Shown: piece after piece, positions 44,901 to 51,078 of the stretch
Layout of the letters: the number at the start of each line of letters is the position of its first letter
How positions within the stretch are numbered: position 1 is the stretch's first letter
Origin: Vicugna vicugna
Taxonomy: Eukaryota
Direction of reading: 5' to 3'
Assembly: GCA_013265495.1 (NCBI GenBank)
Contig: MU063499.1
Coordinates: 248,001 to 312,000 of the forward strand
DNA length: 64,000 nucleotides
Position numbers and translations under genes: made by a program
Notes under the pieces: model-generated
Told to the model about the DNA's origin: nothing
Seen by the model: the letters and a program-made list of their open reading frames with translations, nothing else
Databases searched by the model: none

Positions 44901-47900
44901 CTACGAGAGGGACAGCGTGAGGTGGAAGCGCTGCCGCAGGCCGCGGAACATGACGAACGAACTGGGCGGGAAGGAGCGTGCTGCCACCTCGCAGCGCGGA
45001 CCCTCGAAGGCGCCACCCGCTGGGCACTGGCAGCGGAAGCCGCCGTCGGGCCCATCCGCGCAGGTACCCCCGTTGCGGCAGACGCCGGGCACGCAGCGTC
45101 CGGCCTCCGTGTCCAACTCACAGTCTTCGCCTAGGGGTCAAGCCGCGGTCAGAGGTCAAGACCGCGCAGGCCAATGCTCCAGCGGGCCCCGCCCCTCCGA
45201 AGGCCACGTGCTCCAGGCCAGCGCCAAGACCTCTGAAAAGTCGAGCTCGCTGTGGGCACGCCCCCATTCTGCCTGGCCCGCCAGGCTGCGGCCACGCCCC
45301 TCCCCGGGTCCCGCCCCGTCCACTACCACAGAGCCTCACCGCCCCGCCTGTCCAGGGCCCCGACCCCGGTTGCCTCAAGAGTGATGCTCAATCCTCGCTT
45401 GCACAATAGTTCTGTCCCACTCTCTGCCTGGGTTCACCCCGGCCTGGCGCCCGTCTCACCTGTGAAGCGCGGGCGGCAGACACAGGTGTAGCCTCCCTCG
45501 CGCCGCGCGCAGGCGCCGCCATTGCGGCATGGGTTGGAGTAGCAGAGGTCGAGCTCCGTCTCGCAGAAGTCTCCGGTGAAGCCGGGCGGGCAGCGGCAGC
45601 GCAGGCCTGCGATGGGCTGGATGGGCCTGAAAAGCGTGGAGGCCGAGGCCAGAAAGGGTGCAGACGAGTCAAAACGCAGCACGGACACGCACTTCATGTA
45701 GTTCTCACAGGGCTCGCGCAGGCACACGTTGTCGTCAAAGGGCAGCACTTCCAGGAGTGAGCGGGCGGCAAGGGCGGCGCGGCGCACGTACAGCTGCTCC
45801 TGCAGCTCCTCAGAGCTGAACCAGGGACCCGCAGCGCCAGCCCCGGATCCGCGCGGCGCCAGCGCCGAGAAGCTCACATTGAGCACGGTACCCCCAACGT
45901 CCGTGTCGTTCTGGATATTGAAGATGAAGACATCCTCCGCGGGTGTGGCAAGTACCGCGGCCACGCCTTCCAGGAAGTGGCCCAGCAGTGGCGATAGGAA
46001 GCGTTCCTGCCACATGTTCTCCAGGCGCACTGTCAGGCTGTTGGCCAGCAGCTCCTCCGTGATGATGACCACACGCAGCACACACTGTGCTGTCACACTA
46101 TGTAGGCCATCTACAGGCAGAAGTGGGGGAAGAGGTCAGTCTGGGGTCAGCGGCTTCCCCTCCCTGGGACAAGTGAATTGAAGGATAAATAAAACGTGCC
46201 TTCTTTGGCAATGCCTGTAATTTATACTCCAAAACTTGAGAATGAGCACTGGTAAAGTCTGTCTCTCAACCCCTGCAGCCTCCAGTAGACAGGACTGCAA
46301 GAGCCTCTCCTGCCTGCCCTCTTCTATGAGGGAGAAGTTTATGAAAGCCTGGACCACGGAGGTAGGAAAGAGGCAGGTAGACCTCTGGACATTTTCCCAA
46401 AGGGCAGGGCTTCAGGCAGCCCCTTGGATAGCAGTCAGGCCAGTGTGGGTCCACTCAATGCCTGAGCTGCCAGAGTAAGCTGCGCTTCCCAACCACTAAA
46501 CTGTTGGCCTCCCTCCCCTCCACAGGTAAGTTGAGGGTCAGACTGGACCTAAAGTAACGCTTCATTTGAATAGGGGTGTGGTGTGGGCTGACTGGCCTGT
46601 GGCATTTCCTGGAACCTCCAGAGCATTACCCCAGGATCTCCAGCCTTTCAGAGGGAGATGGGCTAGCCCTAGACCAGCAAGCAGACAGTTCTTTACAGTC
46701 TTTATGGGATCTGCTAATGCTCTAGAATCTTTGGGGTTCTGTGGAGACCGTCCAAGAACCTAAGAAGAAACTATATGAACCTAACCTGTGAGGTCTATGG
46801 CAGATCCTATGGGGTGAAGGAACCCAGCACTTAAGGAATTCTTGGAAGGCTTGGAAATCTCTCTGGTTTGAAGTGCCTTGTGGGGCCCCGGAGGTCACTG
46901 GCTCATTTGATTACCCTCTGCTGCTCACCTGTAACAGTCACCAACATGGAGGCCACCAGTGGACGGTTGTTGTCTAGCTTGCGGCTGAGTCGAAGCTCCC
47001 CGCTGGTCTGGTTGACCACTAGCAGCTGCAACTCATTGCCCCGCTCAAAGGAGTAGAAGAGGTGGTCAGAGACATCAGGATCGTATGCTGGGATGCGCCC
47101 AATAATGCCTGAGGGGAAGGTGTCTGAGCGGTTGGATACATAATTGTTGAAGAGGATCTGAAAGTTGTTGAGCACAGGGCTGTTGTCATTCTGGTCAACC
47201 AGGCGGACGTGCACAGTGGCCCGACTGACCAGAGGGGTTGATGTGGCCTGCACCACAATCACATATTCCTGGCGAGCCTCATAGTCCAAGTCAATGAGTG
47301 CCGTCAACTCTCCAGAGAAGATGTCCATTTGGAACAGCTCAGGGATGTTCCCCTCCACGATCTGGTACATTATATGAGCATTGGGACCTTCGTCAGGGTC
47401 TACTGCAGTGATTTGGGCCACCACTGAGCCCACAATGCTGTTCTCCTTCACTTGCACCTCAAATTCCTCAGCCGGGAAGACGGGTGCATTGTCATTAATA
47501 TCCTGCACTGTCACCTGGATGCTGACTGGAGTCCGAAGCGGGGGCACGCCTCGGTCCACTGCATAGGCAGTCAGTTCATACACTGGCACTGCCTCCCGAT
47601 CCAGCCGCCTCACTGTTCGGACAATGCCAGAGGTGGGCTCAATGGTAAAATCTCCATCCCCATCTTCCCCATTCTGGAAAGTATACTGGACTCGGCCATT
47701 GGCATGAGCATCCCGGTCAGTGGCTGAGATCTGCAGGACACTGGTGAAAGGTGGGGCATCCTCAGAGACCAGCCCTGTGTAATGGGAGGCCACAAACTGT
47801 GGAGCGTTATCATTCACATCATTGACCATCACCTCCACGTAAGTAGTGTCTGCCTTCTGTGGTATTCCATTGTCCCGAGCAGTAATAGCCAGCGTGTAGG

Positions 47901-50670
47901 TCACCTGGTCCTCATAGTCCAGTGGGGCCTGCAGTGTAATGGCCCCTGAGTCTGCATCAATGCGGAACTGGGGCAGGTTGTCTTCCAGGAGATAGGTGAT
48001 TCGAGCATTCTCACCCACATCATCGTCAGAGGCACTGATGACCACTACAGTGCTACCCACTGGCCTATCCTCATTCACACTCACTGAGTAGTGGGCACTT
48101 TGAAAGACAGGTCGGTGAGTGTTGGCATCTGTAATGTTGATGTGCACATAGCAGTGATCATGAAGGGCACGGTCAGATGCAGTTAGCACCAGCTTGAAGT
48201 AGCGTTCCTGCTTGTAGTCCAGTGGCAGAGCCAGTGTCANNNNNNNNNNNNNNNNNNNNNNNNNNNNNNNNNNNNNNNNNNNNNNNNNNNNNNNNNNNNN
48301 NNNNNNNNNNNNNNNNNNNNNNNNNNNNNNNNNNNNNNNNNNNNNNNNNNNNNNNNNNNNNNNNNNNNNNNNNNNNNNNTTCAGCCGTAGGTGGTACTCC
48401 TTCATCGTGAACTCAGGCCGATTGTCGTTAACATCCAGCACAGTCACCGTTACGCTGGCTGAGGCTGAGAGAGGAGGTGAGCCATGGTCTCGGGCCTCCA
48501 CACCAAAGAAGTAATGCTCCACAGACTCACGGTCTAGGGGACCACTCACAGAGACCCAACCAGTGGCACTGTTTATCACAAAGGGTGTATCAGGTGCCAC
48601 ACCAGTGAGGGAGTACTCCAATCTGGCATTCTCCCCATGGTCTGCATCCACTGCCTGAATGTGGATGACTGAGTGGCCCAGAGGTGCATTTTCCAGGACA
48701 GAGACCTGGAAGGGAGTGCTGACAAAGATAGGAGTATGGTCATTGATGTCCACCACCTGGATGCTGGCCAGGCCTGTGTTGTTGGACAGCGGTGGGCGGC
48801 CCGCATCCTGAGCCCGGATGCGCAAGGCATACTCTCTTTCTGCTTCAAAGTCCAGAGGTGCCACCACCTGGATCTCGCCCGTGAGGCTGTCGATGGCAAA
48901 GTGGCCGCGGCTGTTGCCACTGATGATGTTGTAATGCACCAGTCCGTTGGCGTCCTTGTCCCGGTCGGTGGCCGTGACGCGTAGCACCACCGTATGGGGG
49001 CGCACATCTTCGCGCACCTGCGCCACGTAGCGCTTCTCGCTAAACTGGGGCGCGTTGTCGTTCTCATCCAGCACAGTTATGTGCACACGCACGGTGGCTG
49101 ACCGAGGCCCGGGCTCTTGGCCCTGGTCGCTGGCCTCCACTACCAGCTCGTAGTTTTCCATGTGCTCGCGGTCCACGCGACCACTGGTGCTGATGAGACC
49201 CGAGCGCGGATCAATTTCGAAGGCGGCGGCTGCGGCCGCGCGCGCAGCCGGCGGCCCCACAAAGCGGTAACGCAGGTTGGCGTTGGGGGGCGCATCACCG
49301 TCTGTGGCACGCAACTGCAGGATAGGGTAGCCCTCCTCCACGTTCTCACGAAGCGTCTCCCGGTATTGCGCCTGCTCAAATACCGGCGCGTGGTCGTTGC
49401 GGTCGGCCACAGTAACGGCCACCATGGTGGTGGCTGAGAGGCGCGGCGAGCCGTGATCCTGTGCTGTCACGCGCAGGTAGTGGCGATCCATGCTCTCGCG
49501 GTCCAGAGCGGCCTCTGTGCGGATGAGGCCGCTCTGCGGGTCGATGCTGAACAGCTCCAGAGAGCGGCTGTTCATGAGAGCAGCCAGGGAGTAGACTAGG
49601 CGCCCGGCCTCACCCGCGTCTGGGTCCTGAGCCACTACGCGTAGCACCGCGGTACCCGCCGCCTCATTCTCGGGCACTAGCGCCTGGTAGTTGTACTGCG
49701 GAAACTGTGGGTGGCGGTTCGCAGCGCGACGGGGACGGACCCGGCCGGCTGGAGACATTCTCCATACTCCTGGCGGGGCTGGGACCCCAGGGGGGCGCGG
49801 CCCGGGGCGCTGCGGAAGGAAGCGGCGGCGGAAGAGACCATGGGAGCGCATGCGCTCGGGCGTCGGCTCGGGAGCTGTCCGAGACTCGCGGGGTGCTGAA
49901 CCAGACGCGGGAGCTGTCCTCGGTGTGCGAGGTGCTGAATCCAGCTCAGAGCCAGATACCGCAACCTCGGGAGGGCAGTCCGACTGGGGGACTGTCCTCT
50001 TCGCTCGGAATGTCGCGGTTCTCTCTCTCTGACCCCTGCGCCCCGGCGCCCACAACTCCCCGCAGCAGCGCGTGATTCCCACTTTTTTGGGGTCACTTCT
50101 CCCAATATTCCTCTGGGAGGACATCGACTGGGAACCACGCAGCCGAACGAGAAGGTCCGAAGGGAAGGGAGAGCTGTTCTCAGGACCCGAGACCCCTGGG
50201 GACAGAGCCTCTGGCGACAGACTCTCTCTTCGCAAGGACCCTGTCCGCCCACAAGAGGAGACCTCTGGGCGCCAGCATAACAGAGATCCTGGTCCTTGTC
50301 CTGTCTCCCGCCCGCGGCTGCCAAATGCCTGGACCCCGTATTCTGCTTCCAGCCTCGGCTGCTCAGAGGGCTTTCGACCGCTTTGGGCGCTTTGCTTTTC
50401 CCTTCGGAGCCCCACGAAGGCAGGTTCCCTGAATCCCAGGCCAGGCTCTCCATCCTCTCGGACCCCAGGCGGCTCGGGACAAAGAGCTAAGGCTCCGCCA
50501 CCGATCCGCGCCCCTGGCCCAGTAGCGGCAACTACCCCCGGGTCCCAGTCTTGGCCCTTGCAGCCCCCCAGCTCCTCCTGGCTAAGAGGGAACAAAGAGA
50601 GGAGGAGCAGGAGCAGGAGTAGTGGGGTCGTCGGCCCCCTGAGACCCCACCACGGCTGCCGCCTCGCCAT
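26981..50670 (-). CDS. CELSR3: Cadherin EGF LAG seven-pass G-type receptor 3 (adhesion GPCR, planar cell polarity)
   Basis: Exons: 46929-50670, 45460-46110, 44905-45130, 44527-44642, 44083-44171, 43818-43975, 43116-43279, 42734-42859, 42474-42643, 41835-42020, 41143-41259, 40589-40760, 40291-40432, 40070-40190, 39568-39751, 39160-39261, [microexon 38929-38943], 37606-37700, 37245-37454, 36805-37000, 36397-36552, 35809-35983, 35042-35209, 34693-34819, 34400-34606, 34019-34193, 33704-33816, 33178-33257, 32526-32649, 32006-32122, 31751-31899, 31369(or 31363)-31478, 30902-31060, 30148-30348, 28456-29344, 26981-27008. Phases consistent. Signal peptide, cadherin repeats, EGF, LamG, EGF-laminin, HormR, GAIN/GPS, 7TM, tail ending VPRSESHS*. 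Confidence 0.98.
27200..27330. mobile_element. MIR fragment
   Basis: cattttgcagatgaggaaactgaggctcagagaagtcaagt core. Confidence 0.7.
27661..27807 (-). mobile_element. tRNA-derived SINE (camelid Vic-1-like)
   Basis: ggaggtactgggatggaacccaggaccttgtgcatgctaggcatgtgctctaccacttgagctataccctcccc, with (TTA)n tail. Confidence 0.85.
33295..33370. repeat. GA-rich (GAGACA)n microsatellite in a CELSR3 intron
   Basis: cagagagagacagagatagtgagagacagacagagacagagacagagagagg. Confidence 0.8.
38108..38195. repeat. Compound (CT)n/(TCGC)n/(CA)n microsatellite
   Basis: ctctcgctcgctcgctcgctctctttctct...gacacacacacacata. Confidence 0.85.
38511..38900. repeat. Degenerate tandem repeat (about 29-30 bp unit) next to the CELSR3 microexon donor
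   Basis: Unit approximately ggtctgcagggacctcaggcagtgggagg, about a dozen diverged copies. Confidence 0.65.
38929..38943 (-). CDS. CELSR3: CELSR3 15-nt frame-preserving microexon (adds 5 aa: G-LRGA-G)
   Basis: Minus strand ...tttctcttggcttctgggcAG|GATTGCGGGGTGCAG|GTAAG; phase 1/1, matching the flanking exons. Confidence 0.8.
48240..48379. other. Assembly gap (140 N) inside CELSR3 exon 1
   Basis: N run; reading frame is preserved across it. Confidence 0.99.
49871..49939 (-). promoter_or_regulatory. Two tandem long-spacer RE1/NRSE elements within CELSR3 coding exon 1
   Basis: Minus TTCAGCACC-TCGCACACCGA-GGACAGCTCC (49939-49910) and TTCAGCACC-CCGCGAGTCTC-GGACAGCTCC (49900-49871). Confidence 0.55.
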
Positions 50671-51057
50671 CACCCACCGCTTCCCCACACCGCCTCCACT
50701 GTCCCCCGCCCGGGTCCAGACCTTGGGCCCGCCTCGCTGCTCGGGCCCCCACCCGAACCCCTTCCGCCGCCCCAATCCCCCGCCTCTCTGCCCGTCGCTC
50801 CGCGCCGCCGCCACCCTCTGGACACCATCTACTCCGTGGCCAGAGCCCCTTTGACGTGTGGGCCCGGCTTTTGCTGCCCCCACCATAGCATCCCCGACGC
50901 TGCTGCCGCCTCCCGCCGCTCCAACATGGCTCCCGGCCGCTGTGATGGTTCATTCCACCTCCGCCCGGAAGCCCCAAACCCAATGGTACAGGCCGTCGCG
51001 CATGGCAGCTCTATATACCGAAGTTGTTGCAGCCATCTTTATTGAGGGCAGGGTATA

Positions 51058-51078
51058 AGTGCTACCCACGGTGCTGAA
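51058..51078 (-). promoter_or_regulatory. Canonical RE1/NRSE (REST site) upstream of CELSR3
   Basis: Minus TTCAGCACCGTGGGTAGCACT versus consensus TTCAGCACCnnGGACAGCGCC. Confidence 0.7.

What the first reader, a model, noticed from the sequence alone, without database searches (positions are those of the whole stretch)
49871..49939. Two tandem long-spacer REST/RE1 elements encoded inside CELSR3 coding sequence (dual-use codons)
Seen: on the minus strand, two units at a 39-nt (13-codon) period each read TTCAGCACC-N11-GGACAGCTCC. Both RE1 half-sites are near-perfect and identical between copies, including wobble positions (TCA GCA CC / xGG ACA GCT CC), while the 11-nt spacers have diverged (TCGCACACCGA vs CCGCGAGTCTC). 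They encode DSAPRTPRTAP and GSAPRESRTAP in the low-complexity pro-region. Known: the canonical RE1 spacer is 2 nt; REST also binds non-canonical sites with longer spacers (11 nt is at the upper edge of the range I recall); CELSR3 is a neural, REST-repressed gene. Inference: this peptide repeat may be kept partly because the DNA is a silencer array about 750 bp into the CDS.
Basis: partly seen in the sequence, partly recalled or inferred. Interest (0 to 1): 0.8.

Follow-up and report, generated by a model that had tools for sequence, protein, structure and literature searches.

The report
Known REST silencer pair inside CELSR3
Two neighbouring binding sites for the neuron-gene repressor REST lie inside the protein-coding first exon of CELSR3; they are real and strongly conserved as DNA, but the same array has already been published for the human gene, so this is an orthologous copy and not a discovery.

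Summary
On the minus strand, 49939-49910 and 49900-49871 each read TTCAGCACC-N11-GGACAGCTCC with no mismatch, 39 nt apart. They lie 731 nt into the CELSR3 coding sequence.

Tang et al. [quoted passage not shown] In EMSA each left-right pair gives one shifted band and the full array gives two. They cite Jia et al. 2014 for its role in neural expression. Johnson et al. 2008 (PMC2573930) found mouse Celsr3 REST-occupied and among the genes most strongly induced by dominant-negative REST.

What I add is a test of the "dual-use codon" idea in ten eutherians.
- Half-site bases are invariant at 34 of 38 positions, against 2 of 31 in the spacers and linker (p = 6.5e-13).
- Four-fold wobble positions inside the half-sites are invariant at 7 of 7, against 124 of 463 elsewhere in exon 1 (p = 1.2e-4).
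- The leading T is kept even where the amino acid changes.

A third, weaker RE1-like element with the canonical 2-bp gap is conserved in the promoter.

Verdict: real, functional by orthology, already known. Interest is low to moderate.

The parts
49931..49939 (-). Unit 1 left half-site, TTCAGCACC. Codons xxT TCA GCA CCx encode [D/G/N]-S-A-P.
   Evidence: Invariant in 10 eutherians except position 9, which is C>T in elephant.
49920..49930 (-). Unit 1 spacer, 11 nt (TCGCACACCGA).
   Evidence: The sequence varies freely among species while the length is fixed.
49910..49919 (-). Unit 1 right half-site, GGACAGCTCC. Codons xGG ACA GCT CCx encode R-T-A-P.
   Evidence: Invariant except GG>GA in L003 and ACA>ATA in Condylura.
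49901..49909 (-). 9-nt linker between the two units (CGCGTCTGG).
   Evidence: Same length in all 10 species, sequence variable. Matches the 'right-9bp-left' of the human array.
49892..49900 (-). Unit 2 left half-site, TTCAGCACC.
   Evidence: Only position 9 varies, C>T in hamster and elephant.
49881..49891 (-). Unit 2 spacer, 11 nt (CCGCGAGTCTC).
   Evidence: Variable sequence, fixed length.
49871..49880 (-). Unit 2 right half-site, GGACAGCTCC.
   Evidence: All ten bases invariant in all 10 species.
46930..50670 (-). CELSR3 exon 1 coding sequence, the host of the array. The 3' end is approximate. It contains a masked N run that I left as it is.
   Evidence: translation; searches give named CELSR3 orthologues as best hits.
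51058..51078 (-). Promoter-proximal RE1-like element with the canonical 2-bp gap (TTCAGCACC-GT-GGGTAGCACT). It lies about 1.14 kb upstream of unit 1. The left half is perfect and the right half is degenerate.
   Evidence: TCAGCACC is invariant and the right half reads GGGCAG, GGGTAG or GGACAG in the 7 orthologues for which upstream DNA was aligned (L001-L003, L006-L009).

Best explanation
This is the orthologue, in an unnamed eutherian, of the published tandem non-canonical REST/NRSF binding array in the first coding exon of CELSR3.

Each TTCAGCACC-N11-GGACAGCTCC unit is most likely bound by one REST molecule in one orientation. Zinc fingers 7-8 read the left half and fingers 3-5 read the right half, with finger 6 lifted out of the groove as a bridge over the long gap. 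That model is inferred from Tang et al.'s work on non-canonical sites.

Two bound REST molecules recruit corepressors and keep CELSR3 silent in stem cells and non-neural cells. Loss of REST in neurons releases the gene. A weaker canonical-gap RE1-like element in the promoter may contribute.

Because the sites sit in codons, selection on the DNA fixes both the wobble bases and the residues S-A-P and R-T-A-P. The spacer-encoded residues are left free to drift. On this reading the SAPxxxRTAP peptide repeat is largely a by-product of the silencer.

Shown here: the sequence, its non-random nature, and DNA-level constraint across ten eutherians. Shown by others in human and mouse: REST occupancy, binding stoichiometry, and REST-dependent repression. 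Inferred: that the same holds in this organism, and that the peptide has no function of its own.
For: - Exact bipartite matches: 2 found against 0.02 expected.
- Published identical layout in human CELSR3 exon 1, with a REST ChIP-nexus/ChIP-seq peak. EMSA gives a single shift per L-11-R probe and two shifts for the full array (PMC8096226).
- Mouse Celsr3 is REST-occupied and among the genes most strongly induced by dominant-negative REST in ES and neural stem cells (PMC2573930). Human CELSR3 is among the top REST target sites in H1 ChIP-seq (PMC4990229).
- Ten eutherians all keep L-11-R-9-L-11-R. Half-site bases are invariant at 34/38 positions, against 2/31 in spacers plus linker (p = 6.5e-13). 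In the codon alignment, which scores 32/38 for the half-sites because of a gap-placement artefact, flanking positions are invariant at 17/78.
- Four-fold wobble sites in half-site codons are invariant at 7/7. The exon-1 background is 124/463 in 8 species (p = 1.2e-4) and 16/100 in 10 species (p = 9e-6). The result also holds against an A/T-ending matched background.
- The first T of each left half is kept although its codon changes among Asp, Gly and Asn, and between Gly and Arg.
- The only half-site change seen in more than one lineage is position 9, C>T (Pro>Leu). It occurs in hamster and elephant DNA and appears as SAL in 8 of 38 proteins at unit 2. Tang et al. report that this position is barely conserved in non-canonical sites.
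- All 38 eutherian CELSR3 proteins examined keep the 3-residue spacers and linker. A 12-nt indel sits immediately downstream in rodents.
Against: - The 11-bp gap is outside the 7-9 bp class found genome-wide by ChIP-nexus.
- In a genome-wide MPRA only 8- and 9-bp gaps silenced (PMC9903721). Autonomous silencing by an 11-bp unit is therefore not what the general rule predicts.
- Tang et al. leave open that the four motifs could act as half-site-only elements.
- I could not read Jia et al. 2014, the functional study.
- No REST occupancy data for this organism were examined.
- The conservation tests use ten related species. The background shares the same phylogeny, but no explicit tree-aware rate test was run.
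- Unit 1 is weakened in two lineages: GA for GG in L003, and GGATAG in Condylura.
Confidence: 0.88

Rival explanations
1. The conserved feature is the peptide. SAPxxxRTAP would be a functional protein motif in the N-terminal region, for example a processing, glycosylation or phosphorylation site, and its likeness to RE1 half-sites would be incidental.
For: S-A-P and R-T-A-P are nearly invariant in 38 eutherian CELSR3 proteins. A single similar motif appears in squamate and sturgeon CELSR3. The region precedes a conserved RxRR-AANRHP site that looks like a furin site.
Against: Wobble positions are invariant at 7/7 against about 27% in the background. The leading T is kept while its amino acid changes among D, G, N and R. 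A peptide motif would not fix TCA, GCA, ACA and GCT in a GC3-rich exon. The DNA matches 19 of 19 specified REST consensus bases, and the human orthologue binds REST.
Confidence: 0.04
2. The four motifs act as four independent half-site-only REST elements, not as two bipartite 11-bp-gap sites.
For: Tang et al. state this alternative explicitly. An 11-bp gap is outside the 7-9 or 8-9 bp classes. Half-site-only occupancy is known.
Against: EMSA gives one shift per L-11-R probe and two for the whole array, so one REST binds per pair. The gap and linker lengths are fixed in 10 genomes and 38 proteins, while a 12-nt indel lies just downstream. In the MPRA, isolated half-sites did not silence.
Confidence: 0.08
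3. REST control of CELSR3 runs mainly through the conserved promoter-proximal RE1-like element with the canonical 2-bp gap (51058-51078), and the exonic array is secondary.
For: The left half TCAGCACC is invariant in 8 species and the element has canonical spacing. One orthologue (L003) has a perfect GGACAG right half. It lies only about 1.14 kb from the array, so low-resolution ChIP would not separate the two.
Against: The right half is degenerate in most species (GGGCAG, and GGGTAG in this window). It lies in a generally conserved core promoter, so its conservation is less specific. The published ChIP-nexus peak is placed in the first exon.
Confidence: 0.1
4. The synonymous constraint reflects an RNA-level feature, such as mRNA structure or a binding site for an RNA-binding protein, and not DNA binding.
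For: Synonymous constraint alone cannot tell a DNA signal from an RNA signal.
Against: The consensus fold of 10 orthologues is weak at -9.3 kcal/mol, and its covariation term is +0.11, so covariation does not support the fold. The single-sequence fold has z = -0.94. The conserved blocks are exactly the two REST half-site consensus strings.
Confidence: 0.02

Closest known systems
Human CELSR3 first-exon tandem NRSE array (Tang et al. 2021, NAR, PMC8096226; Jia et al. 2014, Mol Cell Biol)
   Same: Same gene, same exon, and the same left-11-right-9-left-11-right layout. Primate proteins retrieved here carry the same SAPxxxRTAP-xxG-SAPxxxRTAP peptide. By position and sequence the window element is its orthologue.
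   Different: A different species, and different spacer and linker letters. Occupancy, EMSA and function were shown in human and mouse, not in this organism.
Non-canonical NRSE/RE1 with a 7-9 bp gap, e.g. the PCDH HS5-1 site with an 8-bp gap (PMC8096226; MPRA in PMC9903721)
   Same: Left and right half-sites lie in the same order and orientation. The recognition model is bipartite, with zinc finger 6 acting as a bridge. Position 9 is relaxed.
   Different: The gap here is 11 bp. That is longer than the 7-9 bp seen genome-wide and the 8-9 bp that silence in the MPRA.
Canonical 21-bp RE1/NRSE (2-bp gap)
   Same: Both half-site strings match the consensus.
   Different: The gap is 11 bp instead of 2, and two units stand in tandem. 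The window holds no perfect canonical RE1, only the degenerate promoter element.
NRSEs inside coding variable exons of clustered protocadherins (PMC2926608; PMC8096226)
   Same: REST sites embedded in large cadherin-family coding first exons, some of them in tandem and binding two REST molecules.
   Different: A different gene family branch and different site types (canonical, 8-bp gap, or right-half only).
Dual-use codons ('duons': transcription-factor sites in coding exons that constrain codon choice; Stergachis et al. 2013, cited from my own knowledge and not checked here)
   Same: A transcription-factor site in a CDS with excess synonymous constraint, and amino acids fixed by the DNA motif.
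   Different: This is a single, individually validated site pair, not a genome-wide statistical class.

Membership tests
RE1/NRSE (REST binding site), non-canonical bipartite class | Left half-site matching TTCAGCACC (motif positions 1-9) | tested here: met
   Two exact copies.
RE1/NRSE (REST binding site), non-canonical bipartite class | Right half-site matching GGACAGCNCC (motif positions 12-21), on the same strand and 3' of the left half | tested here: met
   Two exact copies, each 3' of a left half on the minus strand.
RE1/NRSE (REST binding site), non-canonical bipartite class | Gap length within the accepted range | tested here: inconclusive
   The gap is 11 bp. That is at the edge of the 7-11 bp expansions most often found by ChIP-PET. 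It is outside the 7-9 bp ChIP-nexus class and the 8-9 bp functional class in the MPRA. The human orthologue with the same 11-bp gap does bind REST in EMSA.
RE1/NRSE (REST binding site), non-canonical bipartite class | REST occupancy in vivo | not testable with these tools
   Published for the human orthologue and for mouse Celsr3. No data for this organism were examined.
RE1/NRSE (REST binding site), non-canonical bipartite class | REST-dependent repression of the linked gene | not testable with these tools
   Mouse Celsr3 is strongly induced by dominant-negative REST. The element-level study (Jia 2014) is cited but could not be read.
Dual-use coding element (transcription-factor site constraining codons) | The site lies within translated codons | tested here: met
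   In frame in CELSR3 exon 1.
Dual-use coding element (transcription-factor site constraining codons) | Excess constraint at synonymous positions compared with the same gene's background | tested here: met
   7/7 invariant against 124/463 (p = 1.2e-4) and against 16/100 (p = 9e-6). Also significant against an A/T-matched background.

The most novel reading that the evidence does not exclude
The SAPxxxRTAP peptide would be a passenger of an ancient REST site with an 11-bp gap. A single unit would already have existed in the CELSR3 N-terminus of early bony vertebrates; squamates and a sturgeon carry one SAPxxx[R/W/G]TA[P/T] motif about 105-145 residues before the first cadherin repeat. The unit would then have been duplicated in the mammalian lineage. 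If so, a transcription-factor site has dictated a stretch of protein sequence for hundreds of millions of years, with a gap length that genome-wide rules class as non-functional. The non-mammalian DNA was not seen, so only the peptide evidence exists.
Probability: 0.35. Interest if true: 0.5.

Novelty: already known. Interest (0 to 1): 0.25.

Why it matters
CELSR3 is needed for axon tract and interneuron development, and REST sets its neural restriction. The array is a clean, experimentally backed case of a regulatory site inside codons. The comparative test here shows that the DNA motif, not the peptide, carries the constraint. That matters for interpreting 'silent' CELSR3 exon-1 variants and the exon-1 methylation changes reported in Down syndrome cortex. 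It is also a conserved counter-example to the rule that only 8-9 bp gaps make working non-canonical RE1 silencers. None of this changes the fact that the element itself is already described.

Tried and rejected
- Tandem Repeats Finder on 49000-51000 does not report the 39-nt pair. There are only two copies and their spacers have diverged. This says nothing against the observation.
- A search for a canonical-gap RE1 in the window found no perfect site. The best hit is the degenerate promoter element at 51058-51078. The hit at 49922-49938 is only unit 1 read with its spacer.
- RNA-structure explanation: the consensus fold of 10 orthologues and the single-sequence fold show no significant or covarying structure, so I rejected it.
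- Gene conversion keeping the units alike was rejected. The spacers differ between units within every species, while the half-sites are identical between species.
- Jia et al. 2014 could not be read by PMC id or PubMed id.
- Three orthologue DNA look-ups failed because only the longest isoform is on record: armadillo, wolf and jaguarundi.
- The look-up of sequencing runs returned only coded whole-genome and RNA runs. I did not pursue ChIP runs because the antibody target is not shown.
- The search of earlier findings held nothing about this element.
Full report
**Observation**

The minus strand of the window reads TTCAGCACC-TCGCACACCGA-GGACAGCTCC at 49939..49910 and TTCAGCACC-CCGCGAGTCTC-GGACAGCTCC at 49900..49871. 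A 9-nt linker joins the two. A pattern search finds exactly these two matches with no mismatch. Dinucleotide shuffles give a mean of 0.02 matches even when two mismatches are allowed. The layout is left-11-right-9-left-11-right with a 39-nt period. Tandem Repeats Finder does not call it, as expected for two copies with diverged spacers.

**Context**

The elements lie in frame in a 1327-codon ORF (46903..50886, minus strand). After a low-complexity N-terminal stretch the ORF encodes cadherin repeats. Its best database matches are named CELSR3 proteins of many mammals. The likely start codon is at 50670, so unit 1 starts 731 nt into the coding sequence. Among the named proteins retrieved, Cervus and Ovis CELSR3 are closest, at about 82% identity over the N-terminal region. 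The source is therefore a eutherian, probably a laurasiatherian. The run search returned coded organism names only.

**What is already known**

Tang et al. [quoted passage not shown]
- EMSA gives one shifted band for each left-right pair and two for the full array.
- From this they conclude that each NRSE binds one REST molecule in one orientation.
[quoted passage not shown] 2014.

I could not open Jia et al.. Independent work supports REST control of the gene:
- Mouse Celsr3 is REST-occupied and among the genes most strongly induced by dominant-negative REST in ES and neural stem cells (PMC2573930).
- Human CELSR3 is among the top REST target sites in H1 ChIP-seq peaks, and its exon 1 changes methylation in Down syndrome cortex (PMC4990229).
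- Normalising Rest levels fully restored Celsr3 expression in Rcor1/Rcor2 knock-out brain.

The window element is thus the orthologue of a described and tested element.

**Gap length**

With the half-site definitions used by the MPRA study (positions 1-9 and 12-21 of the 21-bp motif), the gap here is 11 bp.
- ChIP-PET found half-sites most often expanded by 7-11 bp.
- ChIP-nexus found 2 bp or 7-9 bp.
- In the genome-wide MPRA only 8- and 9-bp gaps silenced (PMC9903721).

The CELSR3 units are therefore atypical even among non-canonical sites. Tang et al. leave open a half-site-only reading, although their EMSA favours one REST per pair.

**New test: is the DNA or the peptide constrained?**

I retrieved CELSR3 exon-1 DNA from nine other eutherians. 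Four are unnamed Logan assemblies. Judging only by peptide likeness to named proteins, two look like bats, one looks like a rat-like murid, and L003 is not assigned. The five named ones are Erethizon dorsatum, Cricetulus griseus, Elephas maximus, Cervus elaphus and Condylura cristata.

All ten sequences align without gaps over the array and keep the same layout.
- Half-site bases are invariant at 34 of 38 positions, against 2 of 31 in the spacers and linker (Fisher p = 6.5e-13).
- In the codon alignment, 17 of 78 flanking positions are invariant.
- Where the amino acid is identical in all species and the codon is four-fold degenerate, the third positions inside the half-sites (TCA, GCA, ACA, GCT) are invariant in 7 of 7 columns.
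- The exon-1 background is 124 of 463 in eight species (p = 1.2e-4) and 16 of 100 in all ten (p = 9e-6).
- The result holds against a background restricted to A/T-ending codons (p = 2.4e-4 and 1.2e-5).
- The proline third positions that fall just outside each half-site vary freely.
- The first T of each left half is kept although its codon changes among GAT, GGT and AAT, and from GGT to CGT in elephant.

All 38 eutherian CELSR3 proteins in my hit lists keep the three-residue spacers and linker. A 12-nt indel lies immediately downstream in rodents.

The only half-site change seen in more than one lineage is position 9, C>T (Pro>Leu). It occurs in hamster and elephant DNA and appears as SAL in 8 of 38 proteins at unit 2. 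Tang et al. report that this position is barely conserved in non-canonical sites, because zinc finger 6 no longer contacts it. Two lineages weaken unit 1: GG>GA in L003, and ACA>ATA in Condylura.

This pattern is what selection on a REST site predicts and not what selection on a peptide predicts. No RNA structure explains it. The consensus fold is -9.3 kcal/mol with no covariation support, and the single-sequence z-score is -0.94.

**Mechanism**

The most likely mechanism is that two REST molecules bind side by side. Each reads a left half with zinc fingers 7-8 and a right half with fingers 3-5, and finger 6 bridges the 11-bp gap. This model comes from Tang et al.'s truncation, mutation and simulation work on other non-canonical sites and is inferred for this site. 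Bound REST recruits corepressors and silences CELSR3 outside neurons. The SAPxxxRTAP repeat is then mostly a by-product of the DNA motif. Occupancy and repression in this organism are inferred by orthology and were not shown.

**Other things seen**

- A third RE1-like element with the canonical 2-bp gap lies in the promoter at 51078..51058 (TTCAGCACC-GT-GGGTAGCACT), about 1.14 kb upstream of unit 1. Its left half is invariant in eight species. Its right half is GGGCAG in most, GGACAG in L003, and GGGTAG in this window and in L002. It may contribute to REST control and is a partial rival for the main site.
- Just 3' of unit 2, the palindrome GCGCATGCGC (49855..49846, encoding R-M-R) is invariant in all ten species, including two four-fold Arg wobble positions. 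From my own knowledge it resembles the NRF1 consensus. I did not test this.
- At the peptide level, four squamate CELSR3 proteins and one sturgeon protein carry a single SAPxxx[R/W/G]TA[P/T]-like motif about 105-145 residues before the first cadherin repeat. No such motif occurs elsewhere in about 390,000 residues of the non-eutherian CELSR3 and other cadherin-family hits scanned as controls. This hints at an old single unit that was later duplicated. The DNA could not be fetched.

**Verdict**

The element itself is already described and tested in human, so its novelty is 'already known' and interest is low to moderate.

Noticed in passing
window 51058-51078 (-): Promoter-proximal RE1-like element with the canonical 2-bp gap (TTCAGCACC-GT-GGGTAGCACT). 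The left half is invariant in 8 eutherians. The right half is GGGCAG, GGGTAG or GGACAG. It lies a constant distance of about 1.13-1.14 kb upstream of the exonic array in 7 of 8 species.
   Followed up: partly
window 49846-49855 (-): A perfect palindrome GCGCATGCGC inside the CDS (codons CGC ATG CGC, R-M-R), 15 nt 3' of unit 2. It is invariant in all ten eutherians, including two four-fold Arg wobble positions in CpG context. It looks like an NRF1-type site (from my own knowledge), so it may be a second dual-use element.
   Followed up: partly
window 51029-51039 (-): AAGATGGCTGC in the conserved core promoter. Six of the seven orthologues read AAGATGGCGGC; Condylura has AAGATGGTGGC. It resembles the YY1 consensus (from my own knowledge). 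A conserved CCATGCGCGACGG block follows about 35 nt downstream.
   Followed up: no
P0010, P0012, P0013, P0015 (squamates) and P0034 (Acipenser), N-terminal regions: A single SAPxxx[R/W/G]TA[P/T]-like peptide lies 105-145 residues before the first cadherin repeat. It is absent from about 390,000 residues of the non-eutherian CELSR3 and other cadherin-family hits scanned as controls. It may be an ancestral single-unit version of the REST site.
   Followed up: partly
L004, L005, L006 against window 49859-49870 (-): Rodents (a rat-like murid, porcupine, hamster) lack 12 nt (E-P-T-P) immediately after unit 2, while the array itself has no indel in any species.
   Followed up: partly
window about 49700-49730 (-); R-x-R-R followed by AANRHP[Q/L/F/V]FPQYNYQ is conserved from fish to mammals just before the first cadherin repeat. 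It looks like a furin-type cleavage site.
   Followed up: no
window, inside exon 1 (48 X codons in the translation): A masked or gap N run interrupts the cadherin-repeat part of exon 1. I left it as it is and excluded it from all statistics.
   Followed up: no
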